Notes: a model not told the origin generated them from the letters alone. A stretch of 64,000 bases of DNA from Trichosphaerium sp. ATCC 40318 (GCA_038496445.1 JALMLS010000537.1:1-64000); one strand, 5' to 3'; counted from the stretch's first letter, positions 46-54,450 are shown. Numbers and translations: made by a program.

Positions 46-1035
46 TAGTTAACTTCTACATGCACCTGAACAACGCAATTCAGCGATACATGATGTGTCT
101 TTCCCAGACGTATGAGAGTGATTTTATGAGCTCCTTTAAGAGCAGCAATGCCCTCATTTGTAACATTAAGATATCCAAGTGTGATGGTATGCACACAGAT
201 AGAGCAGCTATACCTTTGTCTGTAAGATTTAAGGAAAGAATAAAAATTGTATGAACACCAGCCAAAGCACTTATTCCATCATCTGTTATCTCGTTGCTCC
301 TACACATCGCATACAAATAAATTGAATGAACGCCTGCAAGTGATTTAAGACCCTCATCTGTCACTGAGGTACCTCCAAGGTATATTGTATGAACACCTGA
401 TAGATGTTTCACACCTTTATCTGATTTGAGCACAGATAAAGACTTATTTTGTGTACGCCTGAGAATGATTCAAGATCTTCATCTCTTACCTTCGTATCGT
501 TTAAATTGATAGAATGAACGCCAGAAAGTACTCCAAAGTTTACGTCGTTGAGGGTTTTACATTTATTTAGAGTTATGGTGTGAACTCCTGCCAGTGCTTT
601 GAGACCCTCACGTGTAATTCCAGTACAACGACCAAGGTTTATTTTATGTACTCCAGCAAGCGCTTTTAGTGTAGAGTCATCAACGCAAAGCCACGCAAGA
701 TTTATTGTATGTACGCCAACCAAACTACTCAAACTTTTCTCATCAAGTGGTGTTTCTGAACGAGGAAGAGCTGATAGATCAAGATGCTTAACACCCTTCA
801 GGTTAACTAAATGCTCCTTTTCTCGTAATTTATAAAATATCATTGTATGTCTTAGAACGCCCTTGTATTGAGATATCATTGCAGATTGATACGGCTTTGT
901 TATAGTTGCTTGAAGGTAACCAACGTTTTGATGAATTATATCTGAGAAAAGATGATTTAGTTGTGATAACTTGTATCGAACGTCATCGTGAGAGGTTTGA
1001 GTAATAAGTGTTAATAATTCAATAGGAACGTCCAA
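46..1035 (-). pseudogene. Intronless F-box-like + leucine-rich repeat (xVTDEGLKALAGVHTINL-type) gene, frameshifted
   Basis: N-terminal LDVPIELLTLI (F-box-like) is followed by many GVHTI/GVHSI LRRs. The repeats continue across frame changes near ~425 (ORF 409-1035 to ORF 80-433) and ~198 (…ALS then VHTITLGYLNVTNEGIAALKGAHKITL in another frame). There is no in-frame ATG before the upstream stop at 1081-1083. Confidence 0.8.
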
Positions 1036-7792: not shown

Positions 7793-8586
7793 TTATAGTT
7801 TGTTCTTTAAGTACTTTAGTTTTCCATCTTCATACCAGCCTTTAATATCTCCATGTCTTTTACCATCAACCCACATGGACTGGTCTGAAGTTGTCCACTT
7901 TCATACCATCCTATACTTTCGCCAGTTTGTTTACCATTGACCCACATGGATTGGCCTTCAAGTTGTCCATTCTCATACAAATCTCTACGTTTGCCATGTT
8001 GTTTGTCATTGGCCCACATGAATAGATACTGTAATTGGCCATTCTTAAACCATCCTTTACTTTCACCAGTATGTTTACCATCAACCCATGAGGCTTGTCG
8101 CTCAAGTTGTCCATTGTTATGCCACTTTTTAAATTCACCATTTAGTTTACCATTAACCCACATGGCATGGTATAGTAGTTGTCCGTTGTCATACCATGCT
8201 TTATTTTCACCATGCTGTTTATCATTAACCCACATGGATTGGACCTGAAGTTGTCCACTTTCATACCATGACAACCACTCACCTTCTTTTTTACCATTGA
8301 CTTGTATGTACTGCTCCTTGAGTGATCCATTTGGATACCATTCTTTAATCAACCCATTTACTGTGTATTGATGAGACTTCACCTTTCCACTTTTATACCA
8401 TCTTATCCATATCCCTTTTCTTTGTAATACTTCATTAAAATGAGTATTTGTTGCAGCTCTCTTTGATAGAGTGTGGAATTTCGTGAATGTTTCAACGTTG
8501 AAAGTACAAATATAGGTTTGAAGTTCACATGGAATATCCAATAAAGTCAAAGCATGCAATTCATTGCACAATTTTCTTTTACACAA
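7793..8586 (-). pseudogene. F-box-like + MORN-variant (YwqK-type) repeat protein, intronless, 1-nt deletion near the 3' end
   Basis: LLDIPCELQTYI is followed by ~8 repeats of WYxNGQL-x-x-x-MWVNGK-x-GE. The last repeat continues in another frame (QSMWVDGKRHGDIKGWYEDGKLKYL, stop at 7793-7795). There is no in-frame ATG. Confidence 0.8.
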
Positions 8587-15800: not shown

Positions 15801-18494
15801 ATCGTTCTGTAAACGGCGTAACATTACACCAGTTGTACAGAAGAGCACCTGTGTCTTCGCACTTCGCTTTGTTTCCAACCTGCAATAAAAATCAAAATCT
15901 ATTACACTCGATTTCTAATACCTTATACTATAACCCACTTGGTTACCAACCTTTTCTCCTCGTTCAGCGGCCACCCTCTCAGCCACAGCAATTGCAGACA
16001 GTCGCCTTGGTTGTGTACAAATGATATTACACTCAGAACCACGTCCTTCGTTTATGTACTTGTCAAGAATAACTTGACCAACCTGAGTAGTTTTACCGCA
16101 ACCAGTTGACCCTATATAAACGGTAAATAACATTCAAAGGTGTAAATAAATGGACAAAAACGAAATAAAGCGATGAAGCTTACCAGAGAGGAGAACAACT
16201 TGATTATTACTAACAATTTCGATGATTTCATCTTTCATTTTGTAAGTTGGTAGCTTTGTCCTAAGTAGTGACTTAATGCTTCTGTACGCTAAGAAAGTGG
16301 AAGGGTACCTGATACGTTGCATTGATTGATATTTTTTATTATTCTTCTGCTTATCTTGAAGGTCATCTAAAAGCCTTTCTGAATCTTCTTTTTGATGTTC
16401 TAGTTGTCTCTTTGTTTTGACACGTTCATAGTAAATTGGCTTCACTTCAGGTTCTGATACTACTACAGGCTTTGGTTTTGGCGTAACGAAAGCCTTCTAT
16501 GGGTAGTAAGAAATTAAAATAGTTGTGGTTGATTTGTCTTACCTTTTCGTTTTTGGCTTGCTCTTCTTGTAGTCGTGCTTGAGTTCTTTCAATAAAAAAG
16601 TTCTTTGATGCAGCTTTACCACCTCTATTACCAGATCCACGACCTCTATTAGAACCGCGACCTACACCACCTGTATTGTTACCACCACGGCCTCTACCTC
16701 TGTTATTTGATCCTCTTCCTTTTCCGCGTCCGCGTCCACCTCGTCCTCTATTGTTTCTACCTCTTCCTCTACCATTTCTTCTTCCTCTTCCTTTGTTGTT
16801 GTAGTTATCTTCTTGACCTTTAGTCAAGGCATTGGGCTCCAGAGACTTGACTTGATCAGGAACGTTGTCTTGTACCCAACTTATAATTTCAAACAACATT
16901 GGAGAACCAATTAAGTCAGCGGCTTCTTTGGCAATCTTTTTGTTAATAGCTCTGATAGTACTAGGCTCAAGTTCTCTAAGAAATATTAAATAACATAGTA
17001 TTGTTGGGGTATACATACTCGTTCACAAAAGCCATGAATGGGAGAACATTAGGGTAAGCACTTGTAGGTGGAATGTGAATTTCAAAAACACTTTTGTTTG
17101 GAATGTTGTCTAGTTTCATCTAGGGACACTAAGACCTTCATCTTTATGTTTATAAGTACCTCCATAGTTACTAGATTATCAGTACACGTAAGGCCTTCTT
17201 CAAAAATATCATTGAGACTCTCTATTTCCTCTTGTTTGTTCTCTTTCTGCTCCTTATTTTTTCTTTAGTAAATTGTTGCTGTTCTTTTTTTTTCTTACTT
17301 CCTCATCTACGGATCCCTCAATCTCTTCAACATCTGATGGGAAGAATGTTTCCATAACGGCATACATAGCTTTTTGCTTGTCTTTATCACACTCAAGTAG
17401 AATTTTTTCAACTTTAGGCTCTGGTACACCATATTTTGAGCTTAACCTAAAATGAACCAATAAGTTCTCTTTTCTCCTAAACACCATCCACTTACATGCG
17501 AACATAATTATTAAGTTCAAATCCCAAACCACCCTTGCTTTCTGGGAGAATAACTTCTACCTAATAAAAGACCTGATTAGATAATAAGTTGGGCATAAAG
17601 AAAACTTGCCTGCGTGGAAAGATTTGTGGACTTGAATTTCCTGGGTAACTCTGTCTCATCGAGGTTGAGGCATAACCACCCAATAGCTTCATTAACATCG
17701 CCATTATTATTGCTTAATCCAAGTATAGCCTAAATCATTCATAAGAATAAATCACGTGGGGTTAAACGCCGTACCTGTGTCTGAGTAAATCCCATACTTT
17801 TTATTCTGCCAATAGCTCTATTATCTTTTGAAGCATTGTAATTACTGTCGCCTTCTTCGCTAGTTTCATCATCGCTCTAATGTTATCCTATAAATACCGT
17901 TTCCCTTCCGTTAAGGGGTTAACCATACCAAGTTCTTTAACATATCTAAAAGCAAGAAAATGAGACAAGAAGAAAACAAGAAAAGATCAAAAAAAAATTA
18001 TGTAAATTACCCATAATCATATCTTCGTTTTTTGAAGAGAACGTAACATTCTCTGCGTTTGAAGGTCCTTTACGAAAAATATCTCGTCTCGCTGAAGGTT
18101 TTTTAGGTACTCTTGGGCCTTTTCTACCTTTTTGAGTATTGTTAGTTACAAATAAATTAAAAAGGGCTTTTCAGCAGTACCTTCAACGGCTACATCGCCG
18201 TAATCGTCCTAAAACGTATTTATGATAAAATTATAAGTTATTTGTTATTACTTGATGCTGTGAAGGATTCCATGGGCGTTGTTGTGAAGAAGCTTATACG
18301 TTTAGACACTTTAAGAATATTATACAGTACCTGCAGCCAATTTCGCTGCCTTCTTTTTTTCTACGGCTGTAAGCTATATATTTAATATTTCTAAGAGTAC
18401 TCGCGCTTCCTGGTGGATTTGTCTTTTTGTTTTGACGCTTGTTTGAGGCATTCTTCCTAAACTTCGCTTTCATGCGCTTTTTCTTTGGCGGCAT
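12845..18494 (-). CDS. DHX57: DEAH/RHA RNA helicase, DHX57-like (UBA/RWD-like N-terminus, RGG tract, helicase core, HA2, OB-fold)
   Basis: Motifs [70 protein letters not shown] and [10 protein letters not shown] across many exons. The RWD end [14 protein letters not shown] and an RGG-rich exon (16447-17016) are present. ATG at 18494, stop at 12845. Confidence 0.85.
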
Positions 18495-21059: not shown

Positions 21060-24000
21060 TTATTCATCAATCTCTTCAACTTTGACATTCTCTGTTGTCT
21101 TAGTTGGCTCTTCTTTTTTGTCTTCCTTTGTCTTTTCTTTTCCTTCGGCGTCTTCTTCTTCTACTTCTTCAGGAGCGTTCTCTTTTGCAGTAACAAGCTC
21201 TTTGTACTGTTCTACAAGTTTTTTAATTTCGTCGCTTGCATCACCGTCCATTAAAGCCCAATAATCTCCTCCTTTCTTATTCAATGATGAGGTGATACAT
21301 TCCTTGTTGGACGCTAAATAAATTTGTCAGAAAATACAAACACAATCTCAAATTATTCTCAAATAAATTCGAACCTTCTTTGTAAAGGTTTTGTAGTGCT
21401 TTCAGAGCAACCATTCTTGTAGAATCATCCTTATTTGTTAGACCAACTTTAATTAGATTCTGTATTAAATCCTTAGTACCACCAATAACACCCAAAAGCG
21501 CATCTAAAATAAGACAAAGTAAATATACAACCAGTACAACAAAAACAAACTATTAAAAATCTTACCGTGGCCTGATAGTGAGTGTACTGCAATAGATCCT
21601 TCTTTGTTTAGAAGGTCAAACTTAGAAGATAAGAGGTTAACCAGTGGGACACATCCTCCCAATTTTGCAATACGAGCGGCTAAGGAATCTACAAATTATT
21701 GTAAGCCAAACAAGAAAAATCAGGAGTAAATGTACCTGTCTGACATAAAGCGCCTACAATACGTGCAGCATCATACTTAACGTGCTCATATTCTGATTTT
21801 GTAGCTTCTTTGATACAAATACTCAATGCATCCAATTTAACAAATGTGTCAATGACATCTTGTTCTAAAATGAAAGTTAGAAAAAAAAGGCAATCAGAAA
21901 AAGTAAATTCCACGCTTACCCTTTGTGCTTAATAGGCTTTTGAATATGCCAATAACACCCCATATTGTAGGACCATTTTCTGTTGCTTTGAAAATACCCA
22001 TTAAAGCTTGGAAAGCGCCAGCATCGAAAATCTTTCGTTTGTTTACAACTAACGTGAAAAAAAGTTAACATTGTTGTATACATGTCTGGTGTCTGGTCTT
22101 TCGATTTATGTCGTACCTGGTATGCATAGATTTTTTAAGCAACCAATACATAGGTGCTTACAACGTAAGTCAGTATCTTCGTCATTAAGTAGTTTAATTA
22201 ATTTGATGTGAAGCTTTGTATCATCAACAAGTTTAATGCAATTCTCCTCTACAAAAAAGCAACAATTAGGTCTTCATCTCGTTTTGTTGTAGGAAGAGTA
22301 AAACGACGTTTCATCATGAAGTATAATAGTATACTCTTGGTTTAAACGTACCACTTCTTGCTAAGTTACCACAAATCATAGAAGCAGCAACTTGAACTTC
22401 ATTGTTCGAATGTTTAAACAAAACAAGAACATTATCAAGATCGCCATACATACTCTTAGCGATATCATCTAAAGCAGTATAAGTAATGCCCAAAACCCCC
22501 GAGAAAAACATATAGTCTGACAAAACTTATTGGACTTCAAAGCAACAACAGTAGCTCCCTGTGATATCCAACAATTTGGATTTCACGCAAAAAATTCAGA
22601 AAAAAAAAGCATATCACCAAGAAGCGTACCATTCAAAGAGAGATTGCTGTATACTTTACTAGCACTAGTGCTAAGTGCTTTAGTTTCCTCAGAGTCAATA
22701 GCTGTCATTTTATATAAACGTGGGATAAGTCCAAGCTCCATAAACTTGATTCTAAGATCCTCTTCAAGAATAAAAAGTAAGCAACCTCACGTGTTTAATA
22801 ATCTCTCTAGTACCTTCTTCTGAAAAGAATTTAAGTGATTCTCCGGCTGCCAACTACATATTGGTCAATATTATACTCTTACGGATGTACAAGTTTATGA
22901 GTTTAAACAGGTTAAAAAAAGTTTGTTGTTGTTTTGTACCTTTACGGCCATTTCTTCGTGCTTTTCCATCATATCTGATAGAATAACAAGTCCGTTTTGT
23001 TTATTAATAAAATCAAGACACATGGATTCTATTCTTAAATAAGTACATAGTTGAGAAAACTAGAATTGTTGTAGAAGGGTTTTTTTTTCTTATGGAATGT
23101 CAAATTTTTATGCTTTTTTTAAAGATGTTTTGGCGAGTCATTAGTATCTCTACGTACTTGTCTCACACATTGCAGTAATAGCAGACACTACAGTATCTTC
23201 AACATCTTCCATAGTTGGTTTAATTAACATTTGTATCAACTTATCATAACCTCCTTGTTTTTGAATTTCCAAGCGATGCTCATCTACAAAAAAAAGAAAC
23301 TTCAACATATAAAAAACAAAGAAAGAAAACTATAGTTTACTAGATCAACAAGATCAAAAAAAACTTGACGAATTACCCGTGTACAAAATATTTCTGAGTG
23401 CTGTGAGTGCTAGCATTACAACATCATACGTTGTATTATCCAGTAGTCCAAGAATTGGCATGTGTGACTTGTTTTCGAATATTAAATCACATGCCTTCTC
23501 TACGCCAAAGAAGTTAATAAAACACAACAACAAAAAAAAAAGTCAACATTGTGAGTATTTTGCAGAAAACATAAAAATAAATCATCATTTCGCTGAATAA
23601 ACCTTTATGATTTAGCCTAAACGCGTATTCGTGTGTTCAAGCATTTTTTCGCGTAGTGTAGAGTGATATTCACGCGAATGGACTTGCTTTTATGCAGAAA
23701 AAGCGGTTTTCAGCCTTTGTTTTACCATTAACGTACCAGTGTCTGCGCATAGATTTGCTACGCATCCGCAAGCCATACGGAGAATTTGAGGTTCTGTACT
23801 GCTGAAATGAGATAAAACGGGCTCTAAGCCCATTTCCATTAGTTTCTCGCGATTAGCTTCTAATGGAGTCGTTTAGAGATGACTGATATACTTTCTAACG
23901 TACTATTGTCAAAACACATGTTTCCCAACAGGCGAAGTGATAGACGAGGCAAATTCGTGTTCTTGTGTGCGAGAAACGGTAAAAAAATAGTAAAAGGTCC

Positions 24001-24272
24001 TACGGCAGCGGAAATGACGTTTCTGTTTGGTTCTACGTGATATTAATCGCTTGGGTACTAAATAAAGAGGTAGTGTACCTTCGCGAGCTAAATCGCCTAA
24101 TTTTTGTAACAGTTCCACCAAAAGCACCTCATCAGTTGGTTCCTTCAAAAATGGTACAACTGCTTGAACTTCTGGAAATTTTGGTGCGTCTCCGTCTAAA
24201 TTAACGTTTAATAGTGATCACCGGCTCCTAGTACTAACCAAACTTGATAAGATTGGTAACTGCGTCTGTCAT
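21060..24272 (-). CDS. RAP1GDS1: Armadillo-repeat GTP-GDP dissociation stimulator, SmgGDS/RAP1GDS1/darlin-like
   Basis: Spliced ARM repeats: RLLGNMCFDN, VQVAASMICGNLARS|EENCIKLV, KHLCIGCLKNLCIP|VVNKRKIFDAG, EHVKYDAARIV and GGCVPLVNLL. These match the SmgGDS pattern, and there is an acidic tail. Confidence 0.75.
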
Positions 24273-24602
24273 GTTAATCTACGTTTGTGTTGACTGAAAT
24301 AGCCGAAGGAACTTAACATATTTACTACTTAAGGCAAACTCAGTCAAGAATCGAAAGAGCCGGCCAGTCAACGCCAGACACTAAACGAACAAGTCAAGAA
24401 TCAACGCAGAGCAAGGTATCTAGTGGTTAGTAATATGATTCTATGAATATGTATTTTAGTATCGCCTCATTTCAAAGTTTGAAATTTGCCCTTTTTTTAG
24501 CAAGTCAATACCATTTATTGCTTGTGTTGTTTGACTTCTAACAATACGAGTTAAGAGAACTACAGTCTGCTTATTTTAATTAGTGTTTATAGTTTATAAA
24601 TT

Positions 24603-27600
24603 TTACATGTATACTATCACTACAGGAGCTTGTTCTTTTGGTTTGTTGAAGAACTGCATGCTAAAATCTTCTGTTTGTTGTGGAGTTCCATAGTATCGAT
24701 AAACACGAACGAATACTGCTACAGGCTCACGCAGTGGTTGAGTATGGAATAGTTTGAGTTGTACATCATAAGGCCCTGTAGGCGCGTTTCTGATCGTATA
24801 TTCTTGAGGACCATAACCTGTACAAAGGTTACACAACAACGATCTATTAAGTTTTTTTTCTTGTACCTTGCCGATCGTCTGACATAAGTCCGCCTGATCG
24901 TGTGTGGTTGTTAAAACTATAACATCTTTCACCTGAAGGCTCAATAACATGTAACTCTACATTGGCTAATGGATTATTCCACGTGATAACAACTCTTAAG
25001 TAACAATAAGTTAGTTTGATGTTTAATGTTTAAGAGTGTTCTTTTTATGAACATACCTCAAGTCGTATTGAAATGTTCTATTGCATATCGTATATAAAGA
25101 AGAGCTTATAGATTTCAGAAGATTTTCAGCCCTTATAATGCCCTCATGGTCATTACATGATGTCCTGAGTGAATGCATAATTCTGCACAAATCCTTTAAC
25201 GCAAATATCTCAATGTTGCCCTTAAAACGATCATCCCAGGTTGTTGTTAGCACTTTCCCAAGTAATTCTATACTCTCTAATATATCCTTGTCTTCGAAAG
25301 CAAGTGCAGCCTCCCTATAACATAGTAAGAAACCAAAAAAGAATATGGGAAAATAAGAAAAATATAGGAAAAAAAAAACCCTATAACGCTTCACGTACCA
25401 CAAGAGCTGAGGTTGCTCTCCACGAATTTTGATCATCTTTTTTAGTACTTGGCGTATCAAATCTTTAGATGCCGTTGCGTCTATGGTATACAGATACCAA
25501 ACAAAAAGACGATAATACTCAATGTTATCAATATCGTCTTCAATCTTTTTTGATATTAATAGTTTACCCAAACGTTTGTTGTTCTGTCCATAGTAAAATG
25601 CGTGATTGATGATTCTTTCTAAAGACACACCGTCTGCTTCAAACTCACTAATGTGGCATGGACTGTCTAATTTTCTTGTACGTTGAGATGATACTATGCC
25701 TTTCTTCTGCCTAAATTTAATAGAGTAAGAACTCGTTCAAATGCGACCTTGTTATCTTTGTTTTACCTTGAACCAACGCTAACTTGTCTCATCAATTCAT
25801 CTAATATAGAATAATCACATTCCTTGTCTTTTGATACATCATAATCCATGCTGTCCTCATCACTACTTGAAGAAGAAGAACTGCTTTCAGATAATAATTC
25901 GGAATCATCTGATTCATCTTCAGAGCTAGAATGCAGAACATATGATGTGTCTTTATCGTCATCTTCACGCTAAATAACATTAATAAAAGTGTTTACAACG
26001 TTTTAAACAAAAATTATACATAAGCACTCCTCCGTGAACGTCTAATTTCTCGAAGTGCAACAGAACCTGCAGTTGATAAGGAACTCCAATAATACAAAAG
26101 AATTTAATATGTACCAGGTCTAAATCTATGTGGTTTCCGTATTCCAGACTCCGATGTTGTAGTATTCGCGTCATCGCTTAAGATAATTTCACGTTCTGAC
26201 TGAGTGTTTTGTGGCTTGTATGCAGGTGCCTTAGATGTAGTCCATCCAGAAGTTTCTCTTCTAGATGATGGAATTGTCTTCACAGGTCCTTTGATTCCTT
26301 TACCCGCTCTGGGCGTCCACTGTAAATCTTCTTCATCACTTTCGCTTTCACTTTCATCACTTGAATCACTCAATATACGGCGGTGTCTCTTAGCAGGCTG
26401 TTTACCACCCAAACCTTTACCGCCTAAACCTTTTCCGCCTAATCCCTTACCGCCTAAACCTTTACCACCCAAACCTTTACCGCCTAATCCTTTACCGCCT
26501 AATCCTTTACCACCTAATCCTTTTCCTTTTTTTTCTTAGAACATTTTATAGTGTATCCAAATAAAGGTACCTCCAAGGCCACTGAAAGATCCATATTGGC
26601 CGATTTGTTTTTTTCTAGCTTTAGCAGGTTGAATTTCCTCTTCTTTCTGCTCTACAATCACTTTTAATCTGTCTAATGAGTCCAAATTTTTATCCCTTGC
26701 TCGTCGTTTTGCTTTTTTCCCTTTTACATTTTTAAGACGCTCTCTAGCTTCTGTTAACATTTCAGCCTCTTCATCGTCATCATCCATTGCATCCTAAAAA
26801 ATAATTAGAAAAAAACAGCTAGCTGATGAAGCTGTGAGAGTAGGGTCACAAGAAAGTATACTTTGAGGTACAGCTAAGATTTTGGATTTTTAATACCTCA
26901 GACTGTTGCATGTGGTCATTTACCGAGCTTGCTTGGTTTTTGGCGTTCTGAAAAAAAGCTCCTTTGTGGTAGTACTTCTGCAAAAACTTGACGCTACTTT
27001 TTTCTGATAGTTTTCTGACTTGTGCTCTTTCTTCTTGCAAACTTTGGTTCGTTAGGGCTGCTCTCTAAGCGTATTATGATAAGCTTGTTGAATAATAACA
27101 TAGTATTCATAGTAAGTACTTACTGTCATACTCCCTTCTGGATTTTTTACAACTACACAAAGAGCTCAGAATGAATGCACATGAATTTAAAAAAAAAACT
27201 TAAGAGTTTGATTTTTGTTTCTTGTAAGACTGTTTTTAGTCTGACCTCTGGTGGTATATAGTATTCATCGCAAAATGTATTGTTCTTGTTGCTTTGCAAA
27301 TTCAACGTACTTTTAAGTTTCCTTGTATTCTTATGTTGCTCTAGCTCATTGGAATCATCACTAACGCTTGGTGATGAGATTATAGAATCACTATCGTAAC
27401 CGCCCATCACACAAACATCCATAAAGTCGTCATCCGGCAACTCAAGCTTTGATGCTTCCTCTACTAGCTTTTCCATTTTTTCCAGATCATCAGGCATTAT
27501 ACTTATCTCTGGAGGCATTAGTGTACAGTCTGTTATGTCAATATCAATTGGTTCTTTCATATCTGATGAGAGTATTGGTGCAGGCTCATTCACAACACAT

Positions 27601-30600
27601 GTTGAATTATAACTTGTTATACTTTTTGTGCCTTCGCTTACAGCGTGTTTTGCAAGTTCTCCTGGAAGCACTATCCTTGTTGCGTCTTGTATATGTCTAG
27701 CTGATATAACAGATTTGTTGTGGTAGTTTGAAACATTTCTGGCTTCATTTGTGATGCGATTGAAAAGGTCATTAACAAAACCGTTCATCAAGTTTATCGC
27801 TTTGTTTGAAATTTCGCTGCCTGGATGAACTTGATGGAGTACTTTGTATATGCGCTTAGTAAAATCTATATCGCTGGTATTTTGGCCATTCGAAAAGGTA
27901 GTGATAGACATGTCATCAGTATCTGTAGGTTCTGGAAGAAGAAACTGTTCAGAATTTTTTGGAAATGTTGATTTGTTTCGTTTTCTACTTGGATATGTCT
28001 CTTGCGTTCTCTTACGTTTGTAGGATCTTGTATTACTTTGATATTGATTCTGATACATGTAATAAGTGTCGTTATAAGTGTCTTCGAAATCAGCAAACTG
28101 CAAAACCTACAAACTTGTAAGACTTCAAGTTTAGCGACTTATTGTTACAAGCAACTTTCTACTTACTTGTCTATTCTTTGATAAAGAGGACGTCTCATAG
28201 AACTTTAAGTGCATATTATATATATCTTGTATTGATAACCATCTTAAAGCTTTAATTGTCTCTGGAGTATCAGTTCTTTTAGACACAACTTCATAATACG
28301 AGGCTCTAAAAATACCAAGCAGTCAGATATGTAACGGCAATGTTGTCACGTACCTCATTTCAGGCATACTCTCAGGAGGAGGTATGCTGTACTTTAAATA
28401 ACTATCAAGGGATTCAAGAACAATCATTGACGTGTATGGTGTAACAAGAGAGTATCGTTTACCAACATCTTTTATACTTGTCTAAAAAACCGAATCAATC
28501 TAACTGGCACTACAAACAAATGCTACCTGAACATCATCGCCATCTCCTCGCATCTTCAGCTCGTCAATCTTCATCTTTGCCCACGTCTTAGAAAGAAGAT
28601 CACCATTATTACTTTCAACAGCGTCTGATAATCGTATCGTGGTTGTATGCATAATATTTCCTGGAGACCCATAATGAAGAATTATGTTTGAGTCCTTCTT
28701 AACAGAATTCATGTCAATCTTCGCAGCTATGTTGAACTGGCTTGCTGCTAATGGCGTTGCAGTTGAAGGAAGCACTATAAATGTTTAGATTAGATTTTAA
28801 CACGTCATAGAATGCTTTTACAAGTCACGTGCGTTCAGATATAAAGTTATCATCGCATTGAGCATACAAGAACGAAAGTGCTTGTACGGAACCAGTCATA
28901 TCTTTTATAATGTTCTCAATAATGCCAGACTTTTTTCGAATAAATTCAAAATCATGTCGTTTGTCTTTGTCACCTTCTTTTGGCATATCATAGAACTTTC
29001 CTCCACTCTTCTTTGCCCACATTTTTAATAGAGTTGTGTTTCTCTTTATTGAGTTGTTGAATACATAAACAGGCCTGGTGAATCGAGGCGGCAGGTGAAA
29101 ATCATCACCAAGTGTATTCAGCCCGTCAGTAACAAGTATAAATACACTGTATGGTGTATCCACATTAGACAATATAGGATCCAAACACGCTAGATTTGTA
29201 GCACCAATACGATGAAAAGAACCTCGGACGGACTAACAACGTAATTATGCAAACGTCAACAAAAAAAAAAAATTTCTTATTTTTTTCTGGAATATTACTC
29301 CAAGTGTTGGCGCAAAAATGTTGCACTGGTAATGGTAGGTACAAAGAGAAAAAGGAAGAAATATTGTAGCGTACATCAACGAGACTTGCGTGGTATTTGT
29401 AAGTCCGCTTTTCAGCGTCTATATCAAACGTATACAAGTCTAGACTACCTTCATAACCATAATTTGCTAAAACTCCTTCAATGATACCAGTGAACTGTTC
29501 AGTGACTGTAGCGCTTCCTGATACATCCCATAATACGCATACTTTACCTCTTTTCTTCTCTTTGTTCGTTCTATATTGCATAGAAGGTATAATATCTTGA
29601 TAGAATAAATGACATTGACTTGACTTCCTGGATCCACTGTTGATCACTGTGTTGCAACTTTTGTCAGGTTTTGTTTGTACGTATTTACTAGCAGTTACTT
29701 ACTTGATATTTGGCATACAGGAGAAGCACAAGAAAATAATCGAACTGTAATTGAAGAAATCGCATTGCTTTTTTGTTTTGAATAATCACAAACATAAGCA
29801 TCTCCTGTGTTTTGAAATTGAAGTAATCCTCCACCAGATACAGACATTTCAGGAGGTTTAAATATTGCACCGAATACCTTTGTTTTTATAAATACGTCGC
29901 TGGAATTCCCAGAGCGTAATGGTAAATGAAACTCAGCTTGGTTGTAATCTTTATTTTCTATTGCAAAAAAAAAAGGTCAGCAAAACGGGAGCTACAAGAA
30001 ATGAACAAAATGGCTTCCACGTGCCTTTTATAAATCTTAGGATTTGCCCTATGGTTACTCGTATCTTCCTTTGTGTACCACGCTTAAAATTATTCATACT
30101 TGTTTTAAACACGTTGCCAACAACATTTTGAACAATCGAGGCTTGTTTTTTTTGAAAGGATTGAGTTTCTTGCTCGAAAACTTTTCTGGCTTTCTCTTTA
30201 TCAACTACAACTGCTTCTACCATGACGTTGTTTATTTCTATGGCGTATTTGGAAACGAAAGCATCTATACAAAGAAGATTAAGCGCGAGAGTTCGTAGGG
30301 CGTTAAAACAATCTTTTAACGCATGGGAGCATCGTTGCAAAGAGTTTTAAGTCACGATTACGCGTTTTGGAGCATGTAAACTTTAAACCGTCTGTTACGC
30401 ACCTTCACCCAACGGAAACTCAAATTCAGCCTCTGTTACGTCATATTCTTCGTTATTCTCAAATATTATCTCCAGTTTGGTTTCTTAGGACAATTTGAAT
30501 ATTAATTTTGTACAAGCTAAGGCTCACCTGCAAGCGCATCATGTATGTCAATCTGTACATTAAATGAAACAGCAGGGATTGACTTTCTCGTTGCTTTATC

Positions 30601-30624
30601 TATGAGTGCTATTGACGCATCCAT
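24603..30624 (-). CDS. VIT - vWA - [histone/spliceosome mosaic insert] - TPR-like - DUF2135 protein (multi-exon)
   Basis: VIT: VQIDIHDALAETKLEIIFEN…EAEFEFPL…AFVSKYAIEINNVMVEAVVVDKEKARKVFEQE. vWA with MIDAS: VLWDVSGS, GATN, LVTDG. ITI-like C-terminus: WAKMKIDEL…GKRYSLVTPYTSMIVLE. TPR-like: RGEQPQLL…WDDRFKGNIEIFAL. DUF2135: LRVVITWNNPLANVELHVIEPSGERCY…GYGPQEYTIRNAPTGPYDV. Confidence 0.85.
26365..26526 (-). repeat. 15-bp coding tandem repeat (GGKGL)x7, histone H4 tail-like, ending GGKQPAKRHRRILSD
   Basis: GKGL(GGKGL)7GGKQPAKRHRRILSD versus H4 [21 protein letters not shown]. The repeat units differ only at synonymous positions. Confidence 0.9.
27603..27863 (-). other. Histone H2B-fold module embedded in the VIT gene
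   Basis: IYKVLHQVHPGSEISNKAINLMNGFVNDLFNRITNEA…IQDATRIVLPGELAKHAVSEGTK is about 55% identical to canonical H2B by hand alignment to the remembered sequence. It is in frame with the upstream VIT-gene exon (…KNRQ|VLQFAD). Confidence 0.9.
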
Positions 30625-30673
30625 CAAGCGAGTATAGAGACGTGTAGTTTGACCGTTTAACTGCTTTATTATT

Positions 30674-31642
30674 ATGAATGAACGTCAGAACAGCCTTGAC
30701 TTAACGCAACTACTTAAGTCTTCAGTGTCTTGTCGTTTGACAAATATTGACAACGTGATTAGTGCCGTCACTATGGGTAAGACTAATACCAAACTTCAAA
30801 TATCCACTACACAAGTTCAAAACTCACCTTCAGTGATAGCAAATCATTCAAGTAAGGCTAGTTCGAAACTAGCCGAGAATCAAACTTGTCTACTACAAGA
30901 GCTTCCACCAGAGACATTAACAGAAATTCTAAGCTACTCGTCCAAAAGAGAGCGTACTAGACAGTCTACAGTCTCTCACCTATTCAATAACATCATTCGC
31001 CACAATATCGGTTTGGGTCACCTTTACCTGAATAAACGTGGTCGCAATACAAACTTTGAACCAATCAAAGGAAGTCCTTTACTGAAGAACACTAAGATTT
31101 ACTGTAGTGGTTTAAATCTATCTGGAGATGAGTTATCTTGTCTATATGGTGTTCATACTATAGATTTACAATCTGCAACAATAACAGATGGAGGTGTCAT
31201 TGCGTTAGTTCAAGGAGGAAAACATAAAATTCATACTATTAATTTACAAGAAACAGATATTACAGATTTTTCTTTAAGGGCACTGAAGGGAGTACATACA
31301 ATCAATGTCAAGTTTTGCTACTATATTACAGAAGAAGGATTAGAGGCTTTGAGAGACACATATGAAATTTCAATCAGTCATCCTAAAGATAAGTGGCTTA
31401 AACATCTTGCCGATGTACATAGTGTTCATATTTATGATGGTCTTAAAATTACAGATCATGGAATCAAATTATTGGTAAATGTTAAGCGTTTACACCTATC
31501 TGAATGCAACACAATAACCGCCTCAGGATTGAAGGAATTGGTGAATCTAGAATATCTTTACATTGAGCGATGTGATTTAATAACGAAGTCCTGTTTGGAA
31601 GATATGAAATTTCTCAAATGGGTTAAAGTCAAAGGGAGATAG
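30674..31642 (+). CDS. Intronless F-box-like + LRR protein (intact member of the GVHTINL family)
   Basis: 322-aa ORF with LLQELPPETLTEILSY followed by GVHTIDL/IHTINL/GVHTINV repeats. The start may be the ATG at 30773. Confidence 0.8.
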   Translation: MNERQNSLDLTQLLKSSVSCRLTNIDNVISAVTMGKTNTKLQISTTQVQNSPSVIANHSSKASSKLAENQTCLLQELPPETLTEILSYSSKRERTRQSTVSHLFNNIIRHNIGLGHLYLNKRGRNTNFEPIKGSPLLKNTKIYCSGLNLSGDELSCLYGVHTIDLQSATITDGGVIALVQGGKHKIHTINLQETDITDFSLRALKGVHTINVKFCYYITEEGLEALRDTYEISISHPKDKWLKHLADVHSVHIYDGLKITDHGIKLLVNVKRLHLSECNTITASGLKELVNLEYLYIERCDLITKSCLEDMKFLKWVKVKGR

Positions 31643-53233: not shown

Positions 53234-54062
53234 TCAAAAAACAACTGTGTTCATTTCAACATCATACTCATCTACAGGTACTTTGTCTACTATCTGCTCT
53301 TTAAAACATATTCCCATAAGCTTTGGCTTTGGCCAGTTATTTTTTGAAGCAACATCGAAGTACTTAGACAGCCATCTATACGAGTTAATTGATGTGAATG
53401 AAAAAAGAATTTTGATTAAAAAAGTACCTATCATAGTAACCTTTGCCTCGTCCCAAACGTCTATTACCACTATCAAAAGCCAACCCAGGCACTATTATAA
53501 GATCTACTGGGTGTTTATAATCCAATGCATTATCTCTAGGGACTCCTGGAGAGACTTCTGGCTTAGGTTCGCTAAAACATGTCAAAACAAAATTTTACGG
53601 GTTTTTTCAGAAGTTTGTACGGAATGCCCCAACGGTTGATCTCAAATGACTTGTAATCAGCTACACTATTAATACGATAGAAATTAAGATCAGTTGGACT
53701 CTCTATAAGTGGAACAAAGACTGTTTTGCCGGATTCTACAGGAAATCGTTTAATCGCTTATAATATGATTTAAAAACCAGCGCAGACTTATTCACTACGC
53801 ATGGAACGGCCATTAAAGCACTTTTGGCTGAATACAAGAAAATTGATAACTAACCTGACGCTAATATTTCTTCGAGTATTCTGTTCGTAGGTACTTCAAC
53901 AGGCATAGAGACGTAACAAACGATAACTTTACTGTCTTTAAACTCTTTTGAACTGAGTATTTTAGTTTGAAGCTCATTGCCTTGTTTTTCAATATCCGAT
54001 GGTGTCAATCCCTTCAAACGCTTCCTTACTTGCTTGCGAAGCGCTCTCTTTGCCACACGCAT
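53234..54062 (-). CDS. MTHFS: 5-formyltetrahydrofolate cyclo-ligase
   Basis: [37 protein letters not shown]|[28 protein letters not shown] and [13 protein letters not shown]. Confidence 0.92.
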
Positions 54063-54450
54063 GATTTCAACGTTTGATGCGAAAAATACTGTTGTGGAAA
54101 TGAGCTGACTCGGAAAGCAGTGACCGCCAGCCCGCAAATCCATATAATCAAAGTCTACCAAAATCTGTGCGACCACTGTCCCAGATGCTGTTGCACGCTC
54201 TGTCGCCCACACGCACAATTGGTTACAAATATTGACAAACTGGACAAACTGCCTGTATCTCATTTTTTTCCGGTGAAGTTTATAGCTTCCAGTTTTACCA
54301 GCAGCCAACATACCCTGTAAAATACTTTGTATTGCTACAGTTTACATAAATATTTGCTTACAGTACACATTGGCCTTGGGTGCTTGTAACAAACAAAAAA
54401 AAAAAGAAAAAAATTCGGAGAAGTCAATATTTCTCAATACTCGCATTCAA

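What the first reader, a model, noticed from the sequence alone, without database searches (positions are those of the whole stretch)
27603..27863. Complete but diverged H2B fold fused inside a non-histone protein
Seen: about 55% identity to canonical H2B, far lower than expected for a real H2B, while LPGELAKHAVSEGTK is perfectly kept. The ubiquitination lysine (K120, canonical VTKY) is replaced (ITSY). An H2B-like basic patch (YKRKRTQETY) lies about 45 aa upstream. Inference: it may dimerise with H2A or histone chaperones, or display the alpha-C surface as bait.
Basis: partly seen in the sequence, partly recalled or inferred. Interest (0 to 1): 0.7.

Follow-up and report, generated by a model that had tools for sequence, protein, structure and literature searches.

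The report
Histone H2B copy inside amoeba scaffold protein
An amoeba gene for a large bacterial-type scaffold protein carries, in the middle of its reading frame, a complete but fast-evolved copy of the DNA-packaging protein H2B next to pieces of other nuclear proteins; this is a real and unusual chimera whose job (probably to display these pieces as binding surfaces) is untested.

Summary
On the minus strand, 27600-27863 encodes a full H2B histone fold (Pfam Histone 1.4e-9; solved H2Bs E about 1e-28; the predicted fold lies 1.7 A from nucleosomal H2B). It is 52-60% identical to cellular H2Bs, which share a median 85% with each other. Its tree branch is about 30 times the median. LPGELAKHAVSEGTK is kept intact (run of 15, p=0.005) and the ubiquitination lysine is Ser.

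The fold sits in a 951-nt open frame with 229 further stop-free codons (chance 9e-8). It lies between VIT exons (4.5e-11) and a DUF2135 exon (2.4e-5) on the same strand. GT-AG introns (one junction needs GC-AG) give a phase-consistent 20-exon model of about 1537 aa. Later exons carry MFAP1, CDC5L, H4-tail and H3-like pieces.

No protein among 1.84 billion representatives shares the flanks. No RNA run was listed, so splicing is inferred.

Best reading: an H2B-derived module that no longer acts as a nucleosomal histone and is displayed in a variable linker as a binding surface or bait. Neutral exon capture and a separate H2B gene are not excluded. The scan had already noted this gene and similar genes on other DNA of this genome.

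The parts
27600..27863 (-). H2B histone fold, alpha1 to alphaC (residues 82-169 of the exon frame that starts at 28106)
   Evidence: Pfam Histone 1.4e-9. Solved H2B chains E about 1e-28. AlphaFold helices at 82-93, 101-128, 136-146 and 149-169 with pLDDT 86-98. Foldseek to nucleosomal H2B: rmsd 1.7 A, target TM 0.83-0.87.
27624..27668 (-). Invariant run LPGELAKHAVSEGTK (end of alpha3 into alphaC). From general knowledge of the nucleosome, it holds the two H2B glutamates of the acidic patch.
   Evidence: 15 of 15 residues identical to the consensus of 116 H2Bs. Run-length shuffle test p=0.005.
27609..27620 (-). ITSY in place of the consensus VTKY: the mono-ubiquitination lysine is Ser
   Evidence: Alignments (column 102, K to S, in a column at least 95% conserved).
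27993..28022 (-). H2B-tail-like basic patch YKRKRTQETY, followed by a second basic cluster SRKRNK (27972-27989)
   Evidence: Coordinates. Resembles the consensus ...KKxRKETYS that directly precedes alpha1 in H2B. HMMER alignments to two H2Bs extend back to exon residues 15-20.
27866..27988 (-). 123-nt in-frame, stop-free spacer between the basic patch and alpha1, bounded by GTAGAA...ATATAG: an insertion or a retained intron (phase 1)
   Evidence: Predicted disordered, pLDDT below 50.
27311..28106 (-). Exon 10 of the model, the H2B exon. The acceptor is at 28106 or 28097, both phase 0. The favoured donor is AAAA|GTACGT at 27310 (phase 1). Alternative ends are 27246 and 27231, or read-through to the stop at 27153-27155.
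   Evidence: Stop-free frame 27156-28106. Splice motifs and phases. P(no stop in the 229 flank codons) = 9e-8.
27417..27524 (-). Acidic helical segment of the C flank with a weak, ungapped resemblance to the last 36 residues of Ran/Gsp1
   Evidence: phmmer E 0.74-1.7, not significant. AlphaFold helix at exon residues 205-219, pLDDT about 77-90. The region word search found nothing.
29954..30346 (-). Open frame that holds the VIT domain exon of the scaffold
   Evidence: Pfam VIT 4.5e-11, 43.3 bits against a cut-off of 26.5.
28831..29646 (-). Two exons read as a vWA domain (DVSGS, GATNL and LVTDG motifs in the places of a MIDAS)
   Evidence: The motifs are seen in the translations. There is no Pfam or PDB sequence hit. 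The nearest Atlas clusters are vWA at score 0.88, a lead only.
26924..27064 (-). Exon with the MFAP1 signature fragment
   Evidence: Pfam MFAP1 2.9e-10.
26571..26793 (-). Exon with a CDC5L/Cef1 fragment (matches residues about 141-192 of CDC5L)
   Evidence: phmmer against solved spliceosome chains, E 8e-8.
26115..26534 (-). Exon with eight GGKGL repeats plus AKRHRRIL (H4-tail-like). Its end, continued in the mini-exon 26020-26066, resembles H3 residues about 36-55.
   Evidence: H4 chains E 0.009-0.04. The H3 resemblance is read from the translation only.
24606..24956 (-). Open frame over the C-terminal exon (24606-24817) with DUF2135; stop codon at 24603-24605
   Evidence: Pfam DUF2135 2.4e-5, 24.8 bits against a cut-off of 22.
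24603..30624 (-). Whole gene model: 20 exons, 4611 coding nt (about 1537 aa), with the H2B fold at about residues 692-779
   Evidence: Boundary motifs and phase arithmetic. No transcript evidence.

Best explanation
The stretch is an H2B-derived module inside a long exon of one multi-exon amoeba gene. The module is a tail-like basic patch, a 43-residue spacer and the complete alpha1-alphaC fold. The gene encodes a protein of about 1537 aa with VIT and vWA-like domains at the N-terminus, DUF2135 at the C-terminus and a linker of about 620 aa between them.

The linker is a chain of pieces resembling conserved nuclear proteins: H2B, MFAP1, CDC5L, an eightfold H4-tail repeat and an H3-like stretch.

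The H2B copy came from a cellular-type H2B, not a giant-virus one. It has since evolved about 30 times faster than real H2Bs.

- Changed or lost: the ubiquitination lysine and 24 of 70 nearly invariant positions.
- Kept: a foldable hydrophobic core and an untouched alpha3/alphaC face.

Shown:
- The fold and its divergence.
- The open frame around it.
- The flanking domains.
- Splice sites that join them in phase.

Inferred: it no longer serves as a nucleosomal histone. Instead it is displayed on a flexible linker as a binding surface, a mimic or bait, for proteins that recognise H2B. Candidates are H2A, histone chaperones or importins, acidic-patch binders, or histone-targeting factors of pathogens. 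The VIT-vWA...DUF2135 scaffold would act as the hub.
For: - Fold.
- Divergence and placement: end branch 1.51 against a median of 0.048, and the copy does not join the viral H2B clades.
- Constraint pattern, invariant columns: 46 of 70 columns that are at least 95% conserved are kept.
- Constraint pattern, hydrophobic core: of 13 changes at hydrophobic consensus positions, 8 stay hydrophobic and 4 are A/V to S/T. Mean BLOSUM62 of these changes is +1.31, against 0.0 at polar positions.
- No indel or stop across 88 codons despite the long branch. The alphaC run of 15 has p=0.005.
- Embedding: a 317-codon open frame, with P=9e-8 for the flanks by chance.
- Flanking domains on the same strand: VIT 4.5e-11 upstream and DUF2135 downstream.
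- The intron before the exon runs from GTAAGT to an acceptor in phase 0. A GTACGT donor after it matches other donors of the gene, and all later junctions close in phase.
- Neighbouring exons hold MFAP1 (2.9e-10), CDC5L (8e-8) and H4-tail (0.009) pieces.
- The flanks are predicted disordered.
- A related class of cytoplasmic VIT/vWFA proteins in Dictyostelium is described as a binding hub tied to an SCF F-box ligase (PMC10539598). An F-box-like/LRR gene starts 49 bp from this gene's ATG on the other strand.
Against: - No RNA run was listed, so neither expression nor any splice junction is observed.
- The vWA domain has no significant sequence hit.
- The exon 3/4 junction needs a GC-AG intron or another choice.
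- The 3' end of the H2B exon is ambiguous, and read-through would stop the protein at 27153-27155.
- No orthologue or paralogue sharing the flanks was found in 1.84 billion representatives, so selection cannot be measured by comparison.
- The 24 changes at invariant positions would also fit decay.
- Only pieces of highly conserved proteins can be recognised at all. The apparent choice of 'hot-spot' pieces may therefore be an ascertainment effect.
- No signalling or enzymatic domain is seen that would turn binding into an output.
Confidence: 0.5

Rival explanations
1. Neutral exon capture. The linker of this scaffold family tolerates insertions. A piece of an H2B gene, like the other pieces, was captured by exon shuffling or retro-copying and is drifting without a function of its own. 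It is kept in frame only because a stop would truncate the C-terminal DUF2135 part.
For: - 24 of 70 nearly invariant H2B positions are changed.
- The end branch is 1.51.
- The ubiquitination lysine is lost.
- A 43-residue spacer splits the tail from the fold.
- No relative shares the flanks.
- There is no evidence of expression.
Against: - Substitutions at core positions are conservative (mean BLOSUM62 +1.31), and there is no indel over 88 residues.
- A run of 15 invariant residues is kept (p=0.005).
- The model folds with pLDDT 86-98.
- Selection against stops alone would not preserve the hydrophobic pattern.
Confidence: 0.25
2. A working histone module. The fold pairs with H2A and is built into nucleosomes, or held by H2A-H2B chaperones, and so tethers the large scaffold to chromatin. 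The basic patch serves as the nuclear import signal.
For: - The fold is complete.
- It keeps a basic pI (9.9, against 9.65 for the consensus).
- alphaC and the acidic-patch glutamates are kept, and basic clusters lie upstream.
Against: - Loop L1 and L2 positions conserved in all H2Bs are changed: G to E, K to N, T to V.
- Identity lies far outside the range of cellular H2Bs.
- About 690 residues before and about 760 after the fold would have to be accommodated at the nucleosome. This is inference.
- Pairing could not be modelled with these tools.
Confidence: 0.13
3. A separate gene or isoform. The 27153-28103 frame is a stand-alone long H2B variant of about 300 aa, starting from an internal ATG and nested between two other genes. 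Alternatively, the transcript ends at the stop at 27153-27155 and yields VIT-vWA-H2B without the C-terminal half.
For: - In-frame Met codons exist at exon residues 16 and 65.
- The frame runs 51 codons past the favoured donor to a stop.
- There are no RNA data.
Against: - VIT without DUF2135, and DUF2135 without an N-terminal half, would each be orphan fragments.
- Nine downstream junctions close in phase.
- The acceptor in front of the exon is in phase with the upstream exon.
- No histone 3' stem-loop or other Rfam element lies in 24000-31000.
Confidence: 0.1

Closest known systems
Canonical core histone H2B (Pfam PF00125)
   Same: The same fold with alphaC, superposed at 1.7 A. The motif LPGELAKHAVSEGTK is identical, the pI is basic, and a tail-like KRKR..ETY patch is present.
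   Different: - 52-60% identity, against at least 67% among the cellular H2Bs sampled.
- Lys to Ser at the ubiquitination site.
- A 43-residue spacer lies between the tail patch and alpha1.
- It is embedded at about residues 692-779 of a protein of about 1537 aa rather than being a protein of about 125 aa.
Histone-fold domains in non-histone or extended proteins (macroH2A, SOS histone domain, TAFs, CENP-T; named from general knowledge)
   Same: A histone fold joined to unrelated domains in one chain.
   Different: Those are N-terminal histone variants or ancient, highly diverged folds with known partners. Here a recognisably canonical-type H2B sits in the middle of a VIT-vWA...DUF2135 scaffold, next to pieces of other nuclear proteins. 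Neither the word search (174-553 aa) nor the 150 best hits of the search of 1.84 billion representatives matched beyond the fold, and the six odd hits scanned with Pfam lacked VIT and vWA.
Integrated decoy domains of plant NLR immune receptors (general knowledge)
   Same: A copy of a host protein or domain embedded in a larger scaffold, diverged from its source but still foldable.
   Different: No NB-ARC, TIR or other signalling domain was detected. There is no known effector, and a whole chain of different pieces is present rather than one decoy. This is an analogy only.
Cytoplasmic VIT/vWFA proteins of Dictyostelium (Vwa1, PMC10539598) and the bacterial VIT-vWA-DUF2135 architecture
   Same: An N-terminal VIT followed by a vWA-like region and a heterogeneous C-terminal part. 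Vwa1 is proposed as a binding hub linked to an SCF F-box protein, and an F-box-like/LRR gene lies head to head here.
   Different: The search of the Vwa1 paper found no mention of DUF domains, and the passages read describe no histone insert. Relatedness of this gene to Vwa1 was not tested.
Giant-virus H2B (contigs of 1.8-2.5 Mb in IMG/VR)
   Same: H2B folds outside the canonical setting, 49-54% identical to this one.
   Different: The viral copies form their own clades or sit with particular cellular H2Bs, and this copy does not join them.

Membership tests
Core histone H2B | Histone fold alpha1-L1-alpha2-L2-alpha3 plus the H2B-specific alphaC helix | tested here: met
Core histone H2B | Sequence within the narrow range of cellular H2Bs | tested here: not met
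   52-60% identity against 67-100% among 36 cellular H2Bs. End branch 1.51 against a median of 0.048. 24 of 70 nearly invariant columns are changed.
Core histone H2B | C-terminal lysine that is mono-ubiquitinated (K120 human, K123 yeast) | tested here: not met
   Ser at that column.
Core histone H2B | Small stand-alone protein with a basic N-terminal tail abutting alpha1 | tested here: not met
   The open frame extends 81 codons before and 148 after the fold, and the basic patch is 43 residues away. Whether a separate transcript exists could not be tested.
Core histone H2B | Forms a dimer with H2A and enters nucleosomes | not testable with these tools
   No multimer prediction or experiment is available.
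VIT-vWA-DUF2135 scaffold proteins | N-terminal VIT domain | tested here: met
   Pfam VIT 4.5e-11.
VIT-vWA-DUF2135 scaffold proteins | vWA domain with a MIDAS | tested here: inconclusive
   DVSGS, GATNL and LVTDG motifs are visible. No Pfam or PDB hit was found on the separate exons. Atlas neighbours are vWA at 0.88. The joined exons were not searched.
VIT-vWA-DUF2135 scaffold proteins | C-terminal DUF2135 | tested here: met
   24.8 bits against a cut-off of 22.
VIT-vWA-DUF2135 scaffold proteins | All parts on one transcript | not testable with these tools
   No RNA run was listed. The splice phases are consistent.
Integrated-decoy immune receptors | Signalling or nucleotide-binding module joined to the decoy | tested here: not met
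   Pfam scans of all exon frames found only VIT, Histone, MFAP1 and DUF2135.
Integrated-decoy immune receptors | The decoy is bound or modified by a pathogen effector | not testable with these tools
   Needs experiments.
Giant-virus histones | Groups with viral H2B in a tree | tested here: not met
   The placement of a branch this long is unsure.

The most novel reading that the evidence does not exclude
The gene belongs to an undescribed amoebal system. A VIT-vWA...DUF2135 hub, possibly working with the adjacent F-box/LRR ubiquitin-ligase adaptor, displays a string of mimics of conserved nuclear proteins. The folded H2B module with an intact acidic-patch face is one of them. The mimics would capture, sense or destroy factors that target chromatin and the spliceosome, for example effectors of intracellular bacteria or giant viruses. 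This would be an integrated-decoy array outside the NLR world.
Probability: 0.25. Interest if true: 0.9.

Novelty: new variant of a known kind. Interest (0 to 1): 0.68.

Why it matters
Histone folds are among the most constrained proteins known. Here a canonical-type H2B was moved into the middle of an unrelated scaffold and then evolved about 30 times faster, while keeping its core and one face. That is a natural experiment on which parts of H2B matter outside the nucleosome.

Together with the neighbouring MFAP1, CDC5L, H4-tail and H3-like exons, it points to a way of building proteins from pieces of essential nuclear proteins. If these pieces act as baits, amoebae, the natural hosts of Legionella-like bacteria and giant viruses, would have a decoy-based surveillance device of a new architecture. 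It could be tested directly by pull-downs with the module.

Tried and rejected
- RNA evidence: the look-up of sequencing runs listed no run for 24650-30649, so read laying could not be used.
- Independent gene model: an exact look-up of the neighbouring F-box/LRR ORF found no record. This genome's proteins seem absent from the collections, and the 1.84-billion search gave no self hit.
- Relatives sharing the flanks: none in the word search (174-553 aa). None of the 150 best hits listed from the representative search matched beyond the fold.
- Odd long hits: P0123 (a Neomeris transcript), P0128 (Persea) and P0167 (Danionella) contain H2B but no VIT or vWA, and look unrelated or like merged gene models.
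- Donor lineage: E-values are flat (1.6e-27 to 5.6e-26) across H2Bs, with early fungi on top. No closer source was found and the tree gives no supported sister group.
- A viral origin is rejected as unsupported.
- Family of the C flank and N flank: no Pfam hit up to E 10.
- The Ran/Gsp1 C-terminal resemblance stays at E 0.74-1.7, and the region word search was empty.
- vWA by sequence: no hit on single exons.
- Repeats or target-site duplications around the exon: only short chance matches.
- Rfam: nothing, and no histone stem-loop.
- Paralogues within the window: none.
- Literature: no paper holds 'DUF2135', and none describes an H2B fold in a VIT/vWA protein.
- The spliced (joined) protein model was not built or searched.

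Full report
**What is there**

The minus strand carries a 951-nt stop-free frame at 27156-28106.
- Residues 82-169 of that frame (27600-27863) are an H2B histone fold. Pfam Histone scores 1.4e-9.
- phmmer against all solved structures returns only H2B chains, at E 6e-30 to 5e-28. They align from alpha1 to the end of alphaC.
- An AlphaFold model was built with 55 H2Bs as the alignment. It gives helices at 82-93, 101-128, 136-146 and 149-169 with pLDDT 86-98.
- Foldseek superposes the model on nucleosomal H2B at rmsd 1.7 A over 87 residues, with target TM 0.83-0.87.
LPGELAKHAVSEGTK is identical to the consensus. VTKY has become ITSY. YKRKRTQETY lies 43 residues before alpha1.

**How diverged it is**

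- Over the fold it is 52-60% (median 55%) identical to 36 cellular H2Bs. Those share a median 85% (minimum 67%) with each other.
- In a maximum-likelihood tree its end branch is 1.51 changes per site, against a median of 0.048. It sits unresolved among cellular H2Bs and does not join the H2Bs of giant-virus contigs (49-54% identity).
- The fold-only word search (candidates of 59-189 aa) gives a flat list (E 1.6e-27 to 5.6e-26, 51-64% identity) with no closer source.
- Of 70 columns that are at least 95% conserved in 116 H2Bs, 46 are kept and 24 changed.
- The changes are not random in kind. There are 13 changes at hydrophobic consensus positions. Eight stay hydrophobic, four are A/V to S/T, and only one (Tyr to Arg) is radical. 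Their mean BLOSUM62 is +1.31, against 0.0 at polar positions.
- There is no indel or stop across the 88 residues. The 15-residue identical run at alpha3/alphaC has p=0.005 by shuffling.
- I read this as a fold kept under selection while many histone-specific surface constraints were released. These include loop L1/L2 positions and the ubiquitination lysine.

**Is it inside a larger protein?**

- The open frame continues 81 codons before and 148 codons after the fold. At this base composition, 229 flank codons without a stop have P=9e-8.
- Pfam finds VIT (4.5e-11) 2.1 kb upstream on the same strand and DUF2135 (24.8 bits, cut-off 22) 2.7 kb downstream.
- Between the H2B exon and DUF2135 lie three recognisable pieces: an MFAP1 fragment (2.9e-10), a CDC5L fragment (E 8e-8 to spliceosome structures), and an eightfold GGKGL repeat ending in AKRHRRIL that matches the H4 tail (E 0.009).
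- An H3-like KPHRFRPG/SVALREIRR stretch, read from the translation only, follows and is split by an intron.
- I located the splice motifs and did the phase arithmetic without joining the sequence.
- The exon before the H2B exon ends ...CAA|GTAAGT at 28167 in phase 0. Two acceptors, giving exon starts at 28106 or 28097, are both in phase 0.
- A GTACGT donor at 27310 (phase 1) is of the GTA type shown by 15 of the 19 donors in the model. It connects to a mini-exon ending at 27124. All later junctions then close in phase down to the stop at 24603-24605.
- The result is a 20-exon model of 4611 coding nt (about 1537 aa), with the fold at about residues 692-779.

Weak points of the model:
- The exon 3/4 junction needs a GC-AG intron or another choice.
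- The exon 6/7 junction closes only with a GTGACT donor and a 'gcaag' acceptor.
- The 3' end of the H2B exon could also be 27246 or 27231, or the frame could read through to the stop at 27153-27155.
- No RNA run was listed for this stretch, so no junction is observed.

Every search was made exon by exon by reference.

**Relatives**

- The word search with the whole exon frame (candidates of 174-553 aa) found 1230 H2B-containing proteins. Each covers only 24-43% of the query.
- The search of 1.84 billion representatives found 4625 hits. In the 150 best that were listed, the best-scoring matched stretch lies within exon residues 15-199, around the fold; none extends into the remaining flanks. 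There is no self hit, so this genome's proteome is not in the library.
- Long hits with H2B (a Neomeris transcript, and Persea and Danionella models) carry no VIT or vWA.
- No paper in the library holds 'DUF2135' or describes an H2B fold in a VIT/vWA protein.
- The nearest studied relatives of the scaffold type are the cytoplasmic VIT/vWFA proteins of Dictyostelium. Vwa1 is proposed there as a binding hub working with the SCF F-box protein FbxwD (PMC10539598).
- Here an F-box-like plus LRR gene (F-box-like 22 bits, just under the cut-off; LRR_6 1.8e-7) starts 49 bp from the gene's ATG on the opposite strand.

**Earlier notes of this scan**

These were used as leads only.
- The same gene was already noted for its spliceosome and histone-tail pieces (s1-383658, s1-383637, s1-383691, s1-404482).
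- Genes of the same architecture on other pieces of this genome are reported to hold an H4 fold (s1-383655) or a SNARE cassette (s1-406581) in the linker.
- I confirmed the MFAP1, CDC5L and H4 pieces of this gene myself. I could not read the other loci.
- So the scan has found this kind of thing before on other DNA of this genome.

**Mechanism**

- Shown: a foldable, fast-evolved, cellular-type H2B module, in frame with disordered flanks, within a chain of nuclear-protein pieces between VIT and DUF2135.
- Inferred: it is displayed as a binding surface. What is best kept is the core needed to fold (and perhaps to pair with H2A) and the alpha3/alphaC face. From general knowledge of the nucleosome, that face holds the H2B glutamates of the acidic patch.
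- The lost lysine and the altered DNA-loop residues argue against ordinary nucleosomal service.
- I put 0.5 on the display/bait reading, 0.25 on neutral capture, 0.13 on true chromatin incorporation and 0.1 on a separate gene or truncated isoform.
- Caveat: only pieces of very conserved proteins can be recognised at all, so the impression that 'hot spots' were chosen may be an ascertainment effect.

**Other limits**

- Read laying was not used because no run was available.

**Verdict**

The function is open. It is a new variant of known kinds (histone-fold fusion, integrated mimic) on an undescribed scaffold. Interest 0.68.

Noticed in passing
window 27417-27524 (-): The acidic segment after the H2B fold aligns without gaps over 36 residues with the very C-terminus of yeast Ran/Gsp1 (PPE... 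to ...LPD-acidic tail). E is only 0.74-1.7. AlphaFold gives a confident helix here. It may be one more borrowed nuclear-protein piece, or chance.
   Followed up: partly
window 27866-27988 (-): A 123-nt in-frame, stop-free spacer bounded by GTAGAA...ATATAG (phase 1) separates the H2B-tail-like basic patch from alpha1. It could be a retained or optional intron.
   Followed up: partly
window 30674-31642 (+): An F-box-like plus LRR gene lies head to head with the VIT gene, with only 49 bp between the two ATGs. Similar LRR ORFs lie at 80-1035 (-). In Dictyostelium a VIT/vWFA protein works with an SCF F-box protein (PMC10539598).
   Followed up: partly
window 26020-26534 (-): Eight GGKGL units plus AKRHRRIL (H4 tail, E 0.009) are followed by an H3-like KPHRFRPG|SVALREIRR stretch split by a 48-nt intron. 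The H3 part was read from the translation only.
   Followed up: partly
L001-L004, L007 (IMG/VR contigs of 1.8-2.5 Mb): Giant-virus contigs encode H2B folds that nest inside the cellular H2Bs in the tree, next to one cellular representative (P0138). L005, L008 and L009 form a separate long-branched viral clade.
   Followed up: no
protein P0123 (EukProt, Neomeris dumetosa transcript, 1007 aa): A green-alga transcript model with two histone-fold hits, ending in an H2B fold at residues 900-1000. This is another long H2B-containing protein, without VIT or vWA.
   Followed up: no
window 7816-8586 (-), 16447-17016 (-), 53850-54311 (-): A MORN-repeat ORF (7.7e-28), an RWD-domain ORF with a long RG-rich tail, and a 5-formyltetrahydrofolate cyclo-ligase fragment. 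These are ordinary neighbours.
   Followed up: no
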